Position numbers and translations under genes: made by a program. The notes under the pieces are model-generated. The model worked only from the letters and a program-made list of their open reading frames with translations. It was not told where the DNA came from and did no database searches. From Haliotis rubra (Eukaryota), in assembly GCF_003918875.1 (NCBI RefSeq), contig NW_025766968.1:5642001-5706000 (forward strand): a stretch of DNA of 64,000 nt. The letters run 5' to 3'. Shown here in pieces: positions 4,878 to 16,530 of this stretch (positions are counted from its first letter, which is position 1; every line of letters begins with the position of its first letter).

Positions 4878-5011
4878 GAGTGAGTGAGTATGGTTTTATG
4901 CCGCTTTTAGCAATATTCCTGCAATATGACGGCGGGTACACCAGAAATGGGCTTCACACATTGTATCTATGTGGGGAATCCAACCCGGGTCTTCGGCGTG
5001 ACGAGCGAACG
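4878..5011 (-). mobile_element. SINE family B (tRNA-Asp-like head, about 160 bp), 5'-truncated
   Basis: Shares body gaagcccatttctggtgt and the (actc)n tail with other family B copies. Confidence 0.85.
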
Positions 5012-5401: not shown

Positions 5402-5546
5402 TGAGTGAGTATGGTTTTACGCCACTTTTAGCAATATCAAGGCGGGGGACACAAGAAAAGGGCTTCACACATCGTACCCATGTGAGGAATCGAACCCGGG
5501 TCTTCGGCGTGACGAGCGAACGCTTTAACTACCCCGCCGACCCGCC
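5402..5546 (-). mobile_element. SINE family B, upstream of CPQ copy A
   Basis: B box (gaatcgaacc on +), family body and tail. Confidence 0.85.
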
Positions 5547-5913: not shown

Positions 5914-7311
5914 ATGGAGGCGTTAGGTATTTTGTTACTCGGTTCCATTTGTTGTGTGTCTGCGGGGCCAGTGAAGGTTACCAGTGTGAAAGACGAAATC
6001 AAAAGCCACCGCGCTGATGCGGAACGTATAATTAACCTGGTGGTCAATGGAAGTGCTAAAGGACAGACATACAACCGACTGGCCGAGTTTGTGGACACAT
6101 TCGGGAGTCGTATTGCGGGTTCTCAGAATCTTGAAAACGCCATTGATTACATGATGAAGAAGTTGAATGAGGATGATCTGGAGAATGTACACGGAGAGTC
6201 CGCCATGGTGCCCCACTGGGTGCGAGGGAAGGAGTCAGCCACCCTGGAGCAGCCACGGATCCTACCCCTCAACATACTGGGTCTTGGGGGTAGCATCGGC
6301 ACCCCTCCCGAGGGCATCACGGCTGAGGTCATTGTGGTCAAGACGTTTGACGAGTTGAAGCGGAGAGCTGCCGAGGCCCGCGGGAAGATAGTGGTGTACA
6401 ACGAGGACTGGGTAGGGTATGGAGCGACTGTCCAGTATCGTTCACTGGGAGCTGTGGAGGCGGCCAAAGTGGGTGCTGTGGCCTCTCTCATACGTAGTGT
6501 GACCCCCTTCTCTATAGACAGCCCCCACACCGGCTGGCAGGACTACAGCGACAACGTCACCAAGATACCTACAGCCTGCATCACGATAGAGATCGCCCAG
6601 ATGCTGCATAGGATGTCCTTGAGAGGGGAGAAGATCGTCATCAACCTCAAGATGGAAGCTCAGAACCTGCCCATGGTCAAGTCCAGGAACACAGTGGCTG
6701 AGATTAAGGGCAGTACATACCCGGATGAAGTCGTGATCGTGAGCGGCCACCTTGACAGCTGGGACGTGGGGCAGGGGGCGATGGACGACGGCGGCGGTGC
6801 CTTCATTTCCTGGCAGGCCCTGTCTCTCGTCCGCCAACTGGGACTTCGCCCTAAGCGTACCCTCAGGATGATCATGTGGACTGCAGAAGAAGAGGGGGTT
6901 TATGGAGCGAAGCAGTATTTCAAGGACCACCAGGACGAAATCCCCAAACACGATCTGGTGATGGAATCGGATCTCGGTACGTTCAACCCAAGAGGTCTCC
7001 AGTTCTCCGGCAACAAGGCAGCCACAGCTATCATGAAGGAGGTCGCCCAACTTCTCAGTTCCATCAACAGGACAACCCTCTACAGTCCCGCAGATGTCAG
7101 CGACACCGGTCTTTGGAAGAACATCGGTGTCCCAAGCGGCAGCATAGAGAACGACAACGAAAACTACTTCTACTTCCACCACAGCAACGGTGACATGATG
7201 ACAGTGGAGAACTCCGGCGTCCTTGACCTTTGTTCCGCCATCTGGGCAGTGGCGGCGTATGTGGTAGCTGACCTTGACGCTATGCTTCCACGGGACATTG
7301 TGAACGGTTGA
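5914..7311 (+). CDS. CPQ: Carboxypeptidase Q (M28 metallopeptidase), copy A; intronless CDS, 465 aa, signal peptide
   Basis: ATG at 5914 (gcaATGG) begins a hydrophobic signal peptide; the ORF-track start at 5842 is a TTG. PA domain (RGKIVVYN...ASLIRSV). M28 metal-binding and catalytic motifs SGHLDSWD, GAMDDG, WTAEEEG, MESD, FHHSNGD; C-terminal MLPR as in animal CPQ. Confidence 0.95.
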   Translation: MEALGILLLGSICCVSAGPVKVTSVKDEIKSHRADAERIINLVVNGSAKGQTYNRLAEFVDTFGSRIAGSQNLENAIDYMMKKLNEDDLENVHGESAMVPHWVRGKESATLEQPRILPLNILGLGGSIGTPPEGITAEVIVVKTFDELKRRAAEARGKIVVYNEDWVGYGATVQYRSLGAVEAAKVGAVASLIRSVTPFSIDSPHTGWQDYSDNVTKIPTACITIEIAQMLHRMSLRGEKIVINLKMEAQNLPMVKSRNTVAEIKGSTYPDEVVIVSGHLDSWDVGQGAMDDGGGAFISWQALSLVRQLGLRPKRTLRMIMWTAEEEGVYGAKQYFKDHQDEIPKHDLVMESDLGTFNPRGLQFSGNKAATAIMKEVAQLLSSINRTTLYSPADVSDTGLWKNIGVPSGSIENDNENYFYFHHSNGDMMTVENSGVLDLCSAIWAVAAYVVADLDAMLPRDIVNG

Positions 7312-7453
7312 CTATTTATTTCAAGGTAATACATGTTAAGCTTTAAAGTGTGTATGTCTGTAATATGTAACAACTGCCTAATTTTGTGTCTTATTAGATG
7401 TAACTTCATTTTGTTGCTGCAAATCTATTTCAAGTTGGTACATTTGGAAAGTA

Positions 7454-7611
7454 ACGTATTTCCTCTAATAAGCGCCCGGACGCTTATTTTTTCAACAGAC
7501 TTATTAGAGGCCAAGCGCTTATTGCGCTTACTGGGCGTAATTAATTATTTCTTAATCGCTGCTTAACCTCCGGCGCTTATTAGTTTCCGGCGCTTATTAG
7601 AGGAAATACGG
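7454..7611. mobile_element. Tc2/pogo-like MITE just downstream of CPQ copy A
   Basis: 22-bp TIR cgtatttcctctaataagcgcc (7455-7476 and 7589-7610), TA flanks, internal cgcttatt repeats. Confidence 0.8.
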
Positions 7612-8203: not shown

Positions 8204-8367
8204 GACTGATTGAGTATAGTTTTACGCGTCTTTTAGCAATATTCCAGCAATATCACGGCGGGGGACACCAGAAATGGGCTTAACAAATTGTACCCATGTC
8301 GGGAATCGAACCCGGATCTTCGGCGTGATGAGCAAACGCTTTAACCACTATGCAACCCCACCGCCCC
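8204..8367 (-). mobile_element. SINE family B
   Basis: Full-length match to family B. Confidence 0.85.
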
Positions 8368-9035: not shown

Positions 9036-9727
9036 GGGAAACAGACTGCTACATACTGGTGGGAAGACTGAACCAAAACTATCCGTGGTATGGACTCAAA
9101 CTGTTGCATTTCCTAGCAACACCGCATGATACAGGACTGCCCGCGCCCGCTGATGACACATGACATGATCATGAAGACAAAGAGAGGAACCAAGGAATTT
9201 ACACTGCATGCAGGGGATAAAACCCGTCGGGAAATTGTGGACCTTCATGGGTGTCATGGCCGTGAAAGGATTAGTGGAAACTATTCATTTGAGTGTTGTG
9301 GGATGTGTGCCCAGCACCCCATTTTATTTGGTGAAATGCCTTGGGCTGTGCCCCTGCTTCGGTGAGGGAAGGGAGCTGGTAGTTTAAGAATACTCGCTCC
9401 AGGAACGAGGTTCCACTAACACACTCCATTGACACTCGCTCCATTTAGAAGCGTAGTGGGATAGACCAGTACTATCACTCGGCCGGTCATGCCAAGCCCC
9501 GTGTACTATCTCCTTTAGCCTGGATTTGTCCTTATTCCATTATCATTTTGCAAATTATAAATGTCTGTTTAAATTCTTTTCAAATCGGATATACATGTTT
9601 TCGATATATGCAATATTTCTGAAATCCCCCAAAACGGTGGCTCATAGCTCATTGTGGTGGAACATTATATATAATGTTTCTGGCAAAGGGTACACTCTTG
9701 GTATTCTTGGTGCTGCTTGGGAGAAGA

Positions 9728-9890
9728 GTGAGTGAGTTTAGTTTTGAGCCGCTTTTGGCAATATTCCAGCAATATCACGGCGGGGGACACCAGAAATGGG
9801 CTTTACACGCTGTACCCATGTGGGGAATCGAACGCTGGTCTTCGGCGTGAAGAGCGAACGCTTTAACCACGGGACTTCCTCATCGTCCCT
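9728..9890 (-). mobile_element. SINE family B with TSD
   Basis: 12-bp TSD cttgggagaaga (9716-9727 and 9891-9902). Confidence 0.88.
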
Positions 9891-11768: not shown

Positions 11769-12017
11769 AGAGTGAGTATGGTTTTACACCGTTTTAGTTC
11801 AAAGCAATATCACGGAGGGGACACTAGAAATGGGCTTTAAACATTGTACTCGTGTGAGGAATCGAACCCATTAGTCGTTAAAGCGTTCGCTCGTCTCGCT
11901 GAAGACCCGGGTTCGAATACCCACATTGGTACAATGTGGGAAGCCCATTTCTGGTGTCCCCCGTCGTGATACTGCTGAAACATTGCTAAAAGCGGCGTAA
12001 AACTGAACTCACTCACT
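11769..12017. mobile_element. Two abutting family B SINEs, head-to-head
   Basis: Minus copy about 11769-11869 and plus copy about 11871-12017. Confidence 0.8.
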
Positions 12018-13280: not shown

Positions 13281-14690
13281 TCATAGTTGAAGTCGACCTT
13301 GTGCCGTATCCCTTGGGAGCAAGGTGTCAAGGTCAGCCACTACGTACGCCGCCACTGCCCAGATGGCGGAACAAAGATCAAGGACGCTGGAGTTCTCCAC
13401 CGTCATCATGTCTCCGTTGCTGTGGTGGAAGTAGAAGTAGTTTTCGTTGTCGTTCTCTATGCTGCCACTTGGGACACCGATATTTTCCCAAAGGGTAGTG
13501 TCACTGACATCTGCGGGACTGTAGAGGGTTGTCCTGTTGATGGAACTGAGAAGTTGGGCGACCTCCTTCATGATAGCTGTGGCTGCCTTGTTGCCGGAGA
13601 ACTGGAGACCTCTTGGGTTGAAGGTTCCCATGTCTGATTCCATTACCAAGCTCTGTTTTGGAATTTCAGCTTTGTGTTGTTTAAAGTACTCCTGTGCGCC
13701 CCAGAGCCCTTCTTCCTCCCCAGTCCACATGATCATCCTGAGGGTACGCTTAGGGCGAAGTCCCAGTTGGCGGACGAGAGACAGGGCCTGCCAGGAAATG
13801 AAGGCACCGCCGCCGTCGTCCATAGCCCCCTGCCCCACGTCCCAGCTGTCAAGGTGGCCGCTCACGATCACGACTTCATCCGGGTATGTACTGCCCTTAA
13901 TCTCAGCCACTGTGTTCCTGGACTTGACCATGGGCAGGTTCTGAGCTTCCATCTTGAGGTTGATGACGATCTTCTCCCCTCTCAAGGACATCCTATGCAG
14001 CATCTGGGCGATCTCTATCGTGATGCAGGCTGTAGGTATCTTGGTGACGTTGTCGCTGTAGTCCTGCCAGCCGGTGTGGGGGCTGTCTATAGAGAAGGGG
14101 GTCACACTACGTATGAGGGAGGCCACAGCACCCACTTTGGCCGCTTCCACAGCTCCCAGTGAACGATACTGGACAGTCGCTCCATACCCTACCCAGTCCT
14201 CGTTGTACACCACTATCTTCCCGCGGGCCTCGGCAGCTCTCCGCTTCAACTCGTCAAACGTCTTGACCACAATGACCTCAGCCGTGATGCCCTCGGGAGG
14301 GGTGCCGATGCTACCTCCAAGACCCAGTATGTTGAGGGGTAGGATCCGTGGCTGCTCCAGGGTGGCTGACTCCTTCCCTCGCACCCAGTGGGGCACCATG
14401 GCGGACTCTCCGTGTACATTCTCCAGATCATCCTCATTCAACTTCTTCATTATGTAATCAATGGCGTTTTCAAGATTCTGAGAACCCGCAATACGACTCC
14501 CGAATGTGTCCACAAACTCGGCCAGTCGGTTATATGTCTGTCCTTTAGCACTTCCATTGACCACCAGGTTAATTATTCGTTCCGCATCAGCACGGTGACT
14601 TTCGATTTCGTCTTTCACACTGTGGAAAGTTAGTGGGATCGAAAACACAGACACGAAAGCTACTGTTAACAGCAATAACGTAAACTCCAT
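13281..14690 (-). CDS. CPQ: Carboxypeptidase Q, copy B; intronless CDS, 469 aa, signal peptide
   Basis: Same motifs as copy A (SGHLDSWD, GAMDDG, WTGEEEG, MESD, FHHSNGD); different signal peptide MEFTLLLLTVAFVSVFS; inverted relative to copy A. Confidence 0.95.
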   Translation of the reverse strand: MEFTLLLLTVAFVSVFSIPLTFHSVKDEIESHRADAERIINLVVNGSAKGQTYNRLAEFVDTFGSRIAGSQNLENAIDYIMKKLNEDDLENVHGESAMVPHWVRGKESATLEQPRILPLNILGLGGSIGTPPEGITAEVIVVKTFDELKRRAAEARGKIVVYNEDWVGYGATVQYRSLGAVEAAKVGAVASLIRSVTPFSIDSPHTGWQDYSDNVTKIPTACITIEIAQMLHRMSLRGEKIVINLKMEAQNLPMVKSRNTVAEIKGSTYPDEVVIVSGHLDSWDVGQGAMDDGGGAFISWQALSLVRQLGLRPKRTLRMIMWTGEEEGLWGAQEYFKQHKAEIPKQSLVMESDMGTFNPRGLQFSGNKAATAIMKEVAQLLSSINRTTLYSPADVSDTTLWENIGVPSGSIENDNENYFYFHHSNGDMMTVENSSVLDLCSAIWAVAAYVVADLDTLLPRDTAQGRLQL

Positions 14691-15721: not shown

Positions 15722-16048
15722 CTATCCATCCATCCATCTAATTCGTTTTAACTAAATGTCTACTCCAACCAAACTTAGTTTCCATCTTCCCTCTCCATCT
15801 CTCTGCCTTACAAACACGAACATGTTTCTGATCTCTTACATATTGAAACGGCAAGTTTATACATATTTTGCCTTAAGTGCGCTCCAAGTCAGACCCACAT
15901 ATGACCCTATACCCAGTATCAGCCAACAACAAATAGTTCTTCAGCAAGATGTTCCTACTATCGTTTACAATGATTACCACGCCTGCGCCTGGTGATGTTA
16001 TATGGCTCAGTTGAGACATGAGAGGGTTTTTAAAAACTACCATTGCAT

Positions 16049-16530
16049 GTCACACTAAGAAGGAGAGAGGCCACAGCACCCACTTTGACCGCCCCCACAG
16101 CTCCCAGTGAACAATACTGGACAGTCGCTCCATACCCTACCCAGTCCTCGTTATAGGTGAGGTGAAATTGGGTTTGACGTCGTACTTGAAAATATTTCGC
16201 TCATATGACGACGTGCATGCGTGTGTATATGTGTATGTGCGGCTGCTTGTACTAGCCCAGACTTAAGCTGGTTTTATAGTGCTAGCTCACTGAGATACCA
16301 TGCCGCAGTTAAGCATGAATACCCCACTCAGACACATTATACTGACTCCGAGCCGACCAGTCCATGTTGTACACATTAATGCCGAGCGCCAGACTGAGAC
16401 CAACAAGTACCATATTTTAACGTCTTTTAGTACGACGCGACCGGGGATCGAACCCGCGACCTTCCGCTCTCCGGGCGGACGCTCTAACCACTACACCACG
16501 GAGGCGGTCTCCTCGTTATAGACCACGATC
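16049..16530 (-). pseudogene. Short CPQ gene fragment (about 120 bp) interrupted by a SINE
   Basis: 16049-16156 plus 16522-16530 align to 14101-14217 of copy B and translate as IVVYNEDWVGYGATVQYCSLGAVGAVKVGAVASLLLSV. Confidence 0.88.
16157..16509 (-). mobile_element. SINE family A, full length, inserted in the CPQ fragment
   Basis: 12-bp TSD tcctcgttatag (16145-16156 and 16510-16521); same 5' end gaccgcctcc as the copy at 2530. Confidence 0.9.

What the first reader, a model, noticed from the sequence alone, without database searches (positions are those of the whole stretch)
6884..6981. Divergent island sits on the catalytic segment of CPQ
Seen: 35 differences in 33 codons (counted by eye, partner 13623-13720), with most synonymous sites changed: AEEEGVYGAKQYFKDHQDEIPKHDLVMESDLGT versus GEEEGLWGAQEYFKQHKAEIPKQSLVMESDMGT. 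Established: in M28 peptidases the EE pair supplies the catalytic base and a metal ligand, and the MESD Asp is another ligand. Inference: selection rejects conversion here and maintains two specificities on a shared scaffold (VY versus LW next to the catalytic Glu, L versus M after the Asp).
Basis: partly seen in the sequence, partly recalled or inferred. Interest (0 to 1): 0.78.

Follow-up and report, generated by a model that had tools for sequence, protein, structure and literature searches.

The report
Ancient unconverted island in abalone CPQ pair
Two neighbouring abalone peptidase genes are kept almost identical by copying from each other, except for a 98-base block over the catalytic core that has stayed different in every abalone species examined, a clean new example of a known evolutionary pattern.

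Summary
There are 35 differences in 6884-6981 against partner 13623-13720. Eleven of 33 codons differ in amino acid, and 15 of 21 degenerate conserved codons differ synonymously. The neighbouring 890 bp has 10 differences and the next 119 bp has none.

The window is Haliotis rubra. Genes A (5914-7311, +) and B (13281-14690, -) are intronless, convergent, CPQ-like M28 peptidases.

In H. rufescens and H. cracherodii the same pair exists. Outside the island, A and B share species-specific substitutions (64 such sites, no paralogue-fixed sites), which is concerted evolution. Inside the island 23 sites are paralogue-fixed and none is species-type (p = 1.6e-21). Unitigs from three further coded organisms fork at or within about 10 bases of the same edges.

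The island is one of four unconverted blocks. The others are the 5' end, a 22-bp mini-island at 7101-7122, and the 3' end.

The block encodes the Glu-Glu loop, the following helices and the strand up to the Asp ligand. Two differing positions align with pocket residues of GCPII, but the changes are conservative.

Selection against conversion is the best explanation but is not shown, and "two specificities" is untested. The kind is known (opsins, RHD/RHCE). The scan had already noted this mosaic in the same window (s1-339722).

The parts
5914..7311 (+). Gene A: intronless carboxypeptidase Q-like M28 peptidase, 465 aa (P0002)
   Evidence: ORF. Pfam PF04389, E = 9e-32. Orthologues are named carboxypeptidase Q-like in H. 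rufescens and H. cracherodii.
13281..14690 (-). Gene B: intronless carboxypeptidase Q-like M28 peptidase, 469 aa (P0121), convergent with gene A
   Evidence: ORF. Pfam PF04389, E = 6e-33. AF2 model pLDDT 88, with TM 0.87/0.92 to the M28 peptidase 3iib.
6884..6981 (+). A-type divergence island: Glu-Glu loop, following helices and the strand up to the Asp ligand
   Evidence: 35 differences in 98 bp. Across three species there are 23 paralogue-fixed sites and 0 species-type sites. Synonymous sites are saturated and dN is 0.19-0.21.
13623..13720 (-). B-type divergence island, the partner of 6884-6981
   Evidence: The B-type islands of three species form a clade with 100/100 support.
5994..6883 (+). 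Left homogenised block (partner 13721-14610, -)
   Evidence: 52 species-type sites and 0 paralogue-fixed sites. A-B dS is 0.025-0.04, against 0.31-0.33 between H. rubra and H. rufescens.
6982..7100 (+). Middle homogenised block of 119 bp between the two islands (partner 13504-13622, -)
   Evidence: 0 A-B differences in H. rubra. There are 7 species-type sites and 0 paralogue-fixed sites.
7101..7122 (+). Mini-island (DTGLWKN in A against DTTLWEN in B; partner 13482-13503, -)
   Evidence: 8 differences in H. rubra, and 5 paralogue-fixed sites in three species.
7125..7292 (+). Right homogenised block (partner 13312-13479, -)
   Evidence: 5 species-type sites and 0 paralogue-fixed sites.
5914..5993 (+). 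Diverged 5' end (signal-peptide region), paralogue-specific
   Evidence: 18 paralogue-fixed sites and no species-type sites.
7293..7311 (+). Diverged 3' end, paralogue-specific. B carries four extra codons.
   Evidence: 5 paralogue-fixed sites plus a 12-nt length difference conserved in three species.

Best explanation
Shown. The block is a relic of the original divergence between two old, convergently oriented, intronless CPQ-like M28 peptidase genes of abalone. Three blocks of the coding sequence (890, 119 and 168 bp) are continually homogenised by gene conversion between the inverted copies. The 98-bp block that encodes the catalytic Glu-Glu loop, the following helices and the strand up to the Asp metal ligand has been left out since before the H. 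rubra and H. rufescens/cracherodii lineages split.

Inferred. Conversion tracts that carry the block across would produce a chromosome with two A-type or two B-type active-site segments. Such chromosomes are removed by purifying selection because the two variants are not interchangeable. The likely targets sit at the two edges of the block: A/G before the Glu-Glu, V/L and Y/W after it, D/S before the Asp ligand and L/M after it. Once dense, the mismatches also reject heteroduplex and make tracts end at the edges, which keeps the borders sharp. The interior synonymous sites and the surface residues have diverged as hitchhikers.
For: Concerted evolution in the flanks. All 64 sites where the species differ consistently have A = B within each species, and none is paralogue-fixed. 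The island has 23 paralogue-fixed sites and 0 species-type sites (Fisher p = 1.6e-21). Five sites separate even H. rufescens from H. cracherodii with A = B in each, so conversion is recent on both sides of the island.

Rates. A-B dS in the flanks is 0.025-0.04. The rubra-rufescens dS is 0.31-0.33, or 0.48 in the unconverted copy C. In the island, synonymous sites are saturated.

Trees. The flank tree does not separate A from B: the two H. rufescens copies pair (80/82), and the rufescens and cracherodii copies group apart from the two H. rubra copies (84/71). On the islands the three B copies form a clade at 100/100.

Edges. The fixed edges are the same to the base in three assemblies. Unitigs of organism C fork at 6883|6884 and 6981|6982. 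Those of organism B fork at the left edge. Those of organism D fork at 6873 and 6981.

GC3. GC3 is 0.67-0.69 in the converted blocks against 0.49-0.51 in the same columns of copy C (p = 4e-8). It is not raised in the unconverted blocks. This fits long-term biased conversion that skipped the island.

Constraint. Both island types are constrained: orthologue dN is 0.013-0.025 against dS 0.34-0.60, and 8 amino-acid differences are fixed in all three species.

Homogenisation of the short block. The 119-bp block enclosed between two heterologies is as homogenised as the 890-bp block. That is hard to reconcile with heterology acting as a simple mechanical wall.

Active-site homology. V/L aligns with Leu428 of GCPII, and L/M follows the Asp ligand as Ser454 does. 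Both are in the GCPII active site or contact the inhibitor.

Theory and precedent. Innan 2003 and the divergence peak on opsin exon 5, as reviewed in PMC3924837.
Against: No functional difference between A and B has been measured. The pocket-position differences are conservative and lie within the family's normal variation.

dN/dS gives no sign of positive selection. The McDonald-Kreitman-like contrast (p = 0.04) is biased by synonymous saturation.

Very sharp edges fit tract termination at heterology better than the smooth divergence peak expected from selection alone.

Three other blocks also escape conversion. Two of them, the ends, probably do so for purely mechanical reasons (the edge of homology).

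I could not measure distances in the model because no coordinates are available.
Confidence: 0.55

Rival explanations
1. Neutral, self-sustaining heterology. The block became strongly diverged once, for whatever reason. Since then its 36% mismatch density alone prevents strand invasion and heteroduplex extension, so conversion tracts stop at its edges. The two variants are functionally equivalent.
For: The borders are extremely sharp: 0 differences in the 119 bp right of the island, and the last left-flank difference in H. rubra is about 100 bp away. The amino-acid differences are conservative. New differences appear just outside the old edge, at 6882 in rufescens/cracherodii B and around 6874 in organism D. 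This looks like slow outward creep of a protected zone.
Against: This does not explain how an internal 98-bp block diverged in the first place while the flanks are re-homogenised at dS of about 0.03. Double-strand-break repair can copy across heterologies that are flanked by homology (established knowledge), so exclusion over a span more than about 6 times the rubra-rufescens split needs more than a partial barrier. The enclosed 119-bp block is converted as efficiently as the long block. The edges coincide with amino-acid differences next to catalytic residues.
Confidence: 0.3
2. Imported patch. In the common ancestor, a short conversion tract from a third paralogue, now lost or unsampled, overwrote the block in A or in B. 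The island then persisted for either of the reasons above.
For: It would give an instant, sharply bounded, saturated block. The B-type motif EEEGLWGAQEYFK is identical in a sea-spider CPQ and nearly so in a mayfly CPQ, so one type could be a foreign, old-looking sequence.
Against: The whole-genome search finds only A, B, copy C and a 39-aa fragment. Copy C is not the donor: island dN to C is 0.42-0.51 against 0.21 between A and B, and C is the outgroup in the island tree. The mini-island and both ends show the same saturated age, so one old divergence explains all four blocks more simply than several separate imports.
Confidence: 0.1
3. Artefact or exon-level origin. Either the assembly collapsed or chimerised two copies, or the island is an alternative exon captured by two retrocopies.
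For: None beyond the block-like shape.
Against: Three independent assemblies and unitigs from several studies show the same structure. The CPQ coding sequence is intronless in Haliotis copies A, B and C and in Patella vulgata, so no exon border lies at the edges. Species-specific substitutions shared by A and B prove ongoing exchange, not two static retrocopies.
Confidence: 0.02

Closest known systems
Divergence peaks kept under interlocus gene conversion (Innan 2003 two-locus model; RHD/RHCE; red/green opsin exon 5; reviewed in PMC3924837)
   Same: The duplicates are homogenised over most of their length, with a short block of high divergence around functionally relevant amino-acid differences that persists across species.
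   Different: This pair is an inverted, convergent, intronless pair in a mollusc. The block spans an enzyme's metal-ligand segment. The edges are base-sharp rather than a smooth peak, and a second 22-bp mini-island lies 119 bp away. Selection is not yet demonstrated here.
Carboxypeptidase Q (CPQ/PGCP), MEROPS family M28
   Same: The proteins are 58-66% identical to metazoan proteins named carboxypeptidase Q, with a Pfam Peptidase_M28 match and conserved His, Asp, Glu-Glu, Asp and His positions.
   Different: The abalone lineage has three intronless copies. The A/B lineage is separate from copy C, which groups with one Gigantopelta copy. No activity data exist.
Glutamate carboxypeptidase II (PSMA) and bacterial M28 aminopeptidases (3iib, SGAP, AAP)
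   Same: They share the catalytic domain fold (TM 0.87/0.92 to 3iib and about 0.65 to GCPII). The Glu-Glu and Asp motifs align. The GCPII positions equivalent to V/L (Leu428) and to the residue after the Asp ligand (Ser454) are in the active site or contact the ligand.
   Different: Identity to GCPII is only about 15%. The Ser454 equivalence rests on ligand spacing, not on a printed alignment. The substrate pockets of CPQ itself are not characterised.

Membership tests
Peptidase family M28 (Pfam PF04389) | Profile match above the curated threshold | tested here: met
   A scores 110.8 bits, B 114.7 bits and C 95.2 bits, against a cut-off of 21.3.
Peptidase family M28 (Pfam PF04389) | Co-catalytic metal ligands (His, Asp, Glu, Asp, His) and the catalytic Glu are conserved | tested here: met
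   H279, D291/D292, E325, E326, D353 and H422/H423 are invariant in 50 CPQ sequences. The Glu-Glu and Asp align with those of 3iib, GCPIII and SGAP.
Peptidase family M28 (Pfam PF04389) | Fold of a solved M28 peptidase | tested here: met
   The AF2 model has pLDDT 88. The Foldseek match to 3iib has E = 6e-44 and TM 0.87/0.92.
Carboxypeptidase Q (CPQ/PGCP) | Closest relatives are CPQ orthologues across Metazoa | tested here: met
   The best hits are named carboxypeptidase Q or Q-like, from molluscs to vertebrates, at 57-68% identity over more than 90% of the length.
Carboxypeptidase Q (CPQ/PGCP) | Dipeptidase or carboxypeptidase activity | not testable with these tools
   This needs recombinant enzyme.
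Selection-maintained divergence island under gene conversion | In the flanks, paralogues within a species are more alike than orthologues between species | tested here: met
   64 species-type sites and 0 paralogue-fixed sites. A-B dS is 0.025-0.04 against 0.31-0.33 between species.
Selection-maintained divergence island under gene conversion | Island sites group by paralogue across species, with stable edges | tested here: met
   23 paralogue-fixed sites and 0 species-type sites, with a B clade at 100/100. The fixed edges are 6884 and 6981 in three assemblies, and unitigs of three further organisms fork at or within about 10 bases of them.
Selection-maintained divergence island under gene conversion | The island holds amino-acid differences that are fixed between paralogues and conserved within each | tested here: met
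   8 differences are fixed in three species. Orthologue dN is 0.013-0.025.
Selection-maintained divergence island under gene conversion | Evidence that selection, not heterology alone, removes converted haplotypes | not testable with these tools
   This needs population haplotypes, gamete typing or enzyme assays. The McDonald-Kreitman-like test (p = 0.04) is biased by saturation and does not count.

The most novel reading that the evidence does not exclude
The pair works as a shared scaffold with a protected active-site cassette. Conversion keeps about 85% of the two enzymes identical, so improvements and repairs spread to both. Selection holds two alternative catalytic-pocket segments (the 98-bp island plus the 22-bp mini-island in a neighbouring loop) apart for many times the age of the sampled abalone radiation. 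The result would be two substrate preferences, possibly used in different tissues.
Probability: 0.4. Interest if true: 0.55.

Novelty: new member of a known kind. Interest (0 to 1): 0.45.

Why it matters
This is an unusually clean natural experiment. The edges are base-sharp, the interior is saturated and the flanks are freshly homogenised. The arrangement is replicated in several abalone species and centred on the metal-ligand segment of an enzyme whose substrate pockets are poorly known.

If the two segments differ in function, the pair points directly at the residues that set specificity in carboxypeptidase Q. It would also give a tractable system, with short intronless genes and simple swaps, for separating selection from mismatch-driven rejection in the escape from concerted evolution. 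If they do not differ, it shows that a 98-bp heterology can shield itself for a very long time.

Tried and rejected
- **Copy C as donor of either island.** Rejected: it differs more from both A and B than they differ from each other.
- **Alternative-exon or retrocopy origin.** Rejected: the CPQ coding sequence is intronless in Haliotis A, B and C and in Patella.
- **Assembly artefact.** Rejected.
- **dN/dS and a McDonald-Kreitman-like contrast for positive selection.** Uninformative, because synonymous sites are saturated.
- **Mapping the differences onto the 3D model.** The model and fold match were obtained but coordinates are not exposed. Only secondary structure and homology to GCPII residues could be used. 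The equivalence of the L/M position with Ser454, and of the mini-island with the Gly518-Asn519 loop of GCPII, rests on motif spacing recalled from knowledge, not on a printed alignment.
- **Expression.** A probable RNA run of organism A holds a 1859-nt B-type contig. That run and two others of the same study hold none of the A-island words. A probable RNA run of organism D holds an A-type island unitig next to B-type ends. The run kinds are guesses, so this is only a hint of differential expression.
- **A/B pair in H. asinina.** No annotated protein was found, but B is also unannotated in H. cracherodii although intact, so absence is not shown. That genome could not be searched.
- **Literature.** A search for Haliotis plus carboxypeptidase Q found nothing.
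- **Binding job.** None was run, since no binding is claimed.

Full report
**What is there.** The window comes from Haliotis rubra. The third copy of the gene in the same genome carries that species name in NCBI. Two intronless open reading frames face each other tail to tail. Gene A is 5914-7311 (+), 465 aa. Gene B is 13281-14690 (-), 469 aa. Both match Pfam Peptidase_M28 far above threshold. Their nearest relatives are proteins named carboxypeptidase Q from molluscs to vertebrates, at 57-68% identity. An AlphaFold model of B (pLDDT 88) superposes on the solved M28 peptidase 3iib with TM 0.87/0.92. A whole-genome search finds only one further full copy: C, on another contig, 65% identical and also intronless. 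It also finds a 39-aa fragment upstream of B.

**Check of the observation.** The two genes align without gaps over 5955-7313 against 13291-14649, with 87 differences. Exactly 35 of them lie in 6884-6981, whose partner is 13623-13720. Eleven of the 33 codons differ in amino acid. Fifteen of the 21 degenerate codons that keep the amino acid differ synonymously, which is saturation. The 890 bp to the left hold 10 differences and the 119 bp to the right hold none. The clustering has p of about 3e-22, or 4e-19 after correction for window position.

**The wider mosaic.** The island is not alone. The 5' end (signal-peptide region, to about 5993), a 22-bp mini-island at 7101-7122 (DTGLWKN in A, DTTLWEN in B) and the last 19 bases plus a four-codon extension in B are equally diverged. 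They are separated by homogenised blocks of 890, 119 and 168 bp.

**Related species.** H. rufescens and H. cracherodii carry the same convergent pair, with spacers of about 6-7 kb. B of H. cracherodii is not annotated but is an intact 469-codon frame. I aligned the six coding sequences and classed every variable site.
- In the three homogenised blocks, 64 sites have A = B within each species but differ between species. None is fixed between A and B.
- In the island, 23 sites are fixed between A and B in all three species. None is of the species type (Fisher p = 1.6e-21).
- Five sites separate even H. rufescens from H. cracherodii while A = B in each, on both sides of the island. Conversion has therefore continued in each lineage very recently.

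The rates agree. Synonymous divergence between A and B in the flanks is 0.025-0.04 in every species. Between H. rubra and H. rufescens it is 0.31-0.33, or 0.48 for copy C, which has no conversion partner. In the island it is saturated.

Maximum-likelihood trees say the same. On the flanks A and B do not separate: the two H. rufescens copies pair (80/82), and the rufescens and cracherodii copies group apart from the two H. rubra copies (84/71). On the islands the three B copies form a clade with 100/100 support. The A-to-B distance in the island is roughly six to seven times the rubra-rufescens distance.

Logan unitigs extend this to three more coded organisms.
- In organism C the graph forks exactly at 6883|6884 and rejoins at 6981|6982, with k-1 overlaps.
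- In organism B it forks at the same left edge.
- In organism D it forks at 6873 and rejoins at 6981. The A-type island unitig has about a third of the depth of the shared flanks, and the loose ends are B-type.

The island is therefore older than the deepest split sampled. Its fixed edges are the same to the base in the three assemblies, and the unitig forks of the other organisms lie at or within about 10 bases of them.

**Signature of long-term conversion.** GC3 is 0.67-0.69 in the converted blocks of A and B. It is 0.49-0.51 in the same columns of copy C (p = 4e-8). In the unconverted blocks it is 0.48-0.58, no higher than in C. This fits GC-biased conversion acting for a long time on the flanks and not on the island.

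**What the island encodes.** In the model, the strand 315-322 ends just before the island. The island then covers three elements:
- the loop with E325 and E326;
- helices 330-338 and 340-345;
- strand 346-351, up to D353 and the next three residues.

E325, E326 and D353 are invariant in 50 CPQ sequences. They align with the Glu-Glu pair and the Asp of 3iib, GCPIII and the Streptomyces aminopeptidase. In GCPII these are Glu424 (mutated in inactive forms), the ligand Glu425 and the ligand Asp453. The rest of that assignment is established knowledge.

By the printed alignment to GCPIII, and by the identical GCPII motif (my knowledge), V/L corresponds to Leu428 and Y/W to Leu429. The residue after the Asp ligand (L/M) corresponds by spacing to Ser454. 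Leu428 and Gly427 belong to the GCPII active-site cluster, and Ser454 hydrogen-bonds an inhibitor's P1 group (PMC10865363).

However, the changes are conservative, and the same positions vary widely in the family: G/L/H/V at one, V/I/F/W at the next, and I/M/G/E/L after the Asp. Most other differences are charged residues in the helix and the loop.

Eight differences are fixed in all three species, and a ninth position differs in all three. Each type is under purifying selection: orthologue dN is 0.013-0.025 against dS 0.34-0.60.

**How it most likely works.**

*Shown:* ongoing conversion between the inverted copies, and long-standing exclusion of the block.

*Inferred:* why the block is excluded. 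I favour selection against converted haplotypes, reinforced by heteroduplex rejection at 36% mismatch (confidence 0.55). There are four reasons.
1. An internal block cannot drift apart while its surroundings are re-homogenised at dS of about 0.03, unless something protects the first differences. This is the logic of Innan's two-locus model and of the opsin exon 5 peak (PMC3924837).
2. Both edges coincide with amino-acid differences next to catalytic residues: A/G at 6884-6885, and L/M at 6973-6975 with the last difference at 6981.
3. The 119-bp block shut in between two heterologies is as well homogenised as the 890-bp block. Heterology therefore does not simply wall off conversion.
4. Both types are conserved.

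*Against:* no functional difference is known, the substitutions are mild, and the edges are sharper than selection alone predicts.

The main rival is a neutral, self-sustaining mismatch barrier (0.3). It explains the sharp edges and the small outward creep seen at 6882 in rufescens/cracherodii B and near 6874 in organism D, but it does not explain the origin of the block.

An imported patch from a lost paralogue (0.1) is not excluded. It is favoured only by the curious identity of the B-type motif EEEGLWGAQEYFK with a sea-spider CPQ. Copy C is not the donor. The four unconverted blocks share the same saturated age, so one old divergence is the simpler account.

Artefact and exon-based origins are rejected.

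**Expression hints.** One small run of organism A, which can only be RNA given a 1.9-kb contig at depth 11 in 57 Mb, holds a B-type contig with B-type ends. That run and two others of the same study hold none of the A-island words. Organism D's probable RNA run holds both types. The run kinds are guesses, so a regulatory difference between A and B is possible but not shown.

**Comparison with what is known, and novelty.** Divergence islands inside concertedly evolving duplicates are an established kind: RHD/RHCE, red/green opsins, yeast heat-shock genes. The theory is in place. No paper in the library links Haliotis and carboxypeptidase Q. I class this as a new member of a known kind. It is unusually clean and sits on an enzyme's catalytic segment. 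Interest is 0.45.

**Rules.** Read laying was given 1,801 letters.

Noticed in passing
window 16045-16510: A 39-aa fragment of a CPQ-like coding sequence lies at 16045-16161 (-). It is 93% identical in DNA to 6397-6503. It is joined directly to an inverted copy (93-95%) of 2529-2891, which is DNA lying 3 kb upstream of gene A. This may be a remnant of a larger original inverted duplication or of a partial third local copy.
   Followed up: no
window 7101-7122 (partner 13482-13503): A second, 22-bp paralogue-fixed mini-island (G/T and K/E) is conserved in three species. It lies two residues after the invariant Asp397, in a loop that may lie near the active site, by a GCPII motif-spacing guess that was not checked against an alignment.
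   Followed up: partly
window 5994-7292 against L003:1504-2904: GC3 of the converted blocks of A and B is 0.67-0.69, against 0.49-0.51 in copy C. The unconverted blocks are not raised. This is a signature of GC-biased gene conversion.
   Followed up: yes
window 13281-14690 and 6862-7003: Probable RNA runs of organism A hold a 1859-nt B-type contig but no A-island words, so the two copies may be expressed differently.
   Followed up: partly
window 4879-5011, 5426-5532, 8207-8350, 9727-9870, 11872-12017; also 7408-7500: There are several copies of a SINE-like repeat beginning AGTGAGTGAGT. The stretch 7408-7500 is a very high-copy repeat by unitig depth.
   Followed up: no
L003, L007, L008, L009: The CPQ coding sequence is intronless in Haliotis copy C of three species and in Patella vulgata. 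In H. rufescens, copy C lies on the same chromosome as A/B, about 40 Mb away.
   Followed up: partly
P0012, P0065 against window 13623-13720: The B-type motif EEEGLWGAQEYFK is identical in a Nymphon striatum CPQ and nearly so in Ephemera danica. The A/B clade groups weakly with these in a protein tree, while copy C groups with one Gigantopelta copy.
   Followed up: partly
L006:18074-19483 (-): Gene B of H. cracherodii is an intact 469-codon frame, but no gene is called there in the record that was read.
   Followed up: yes
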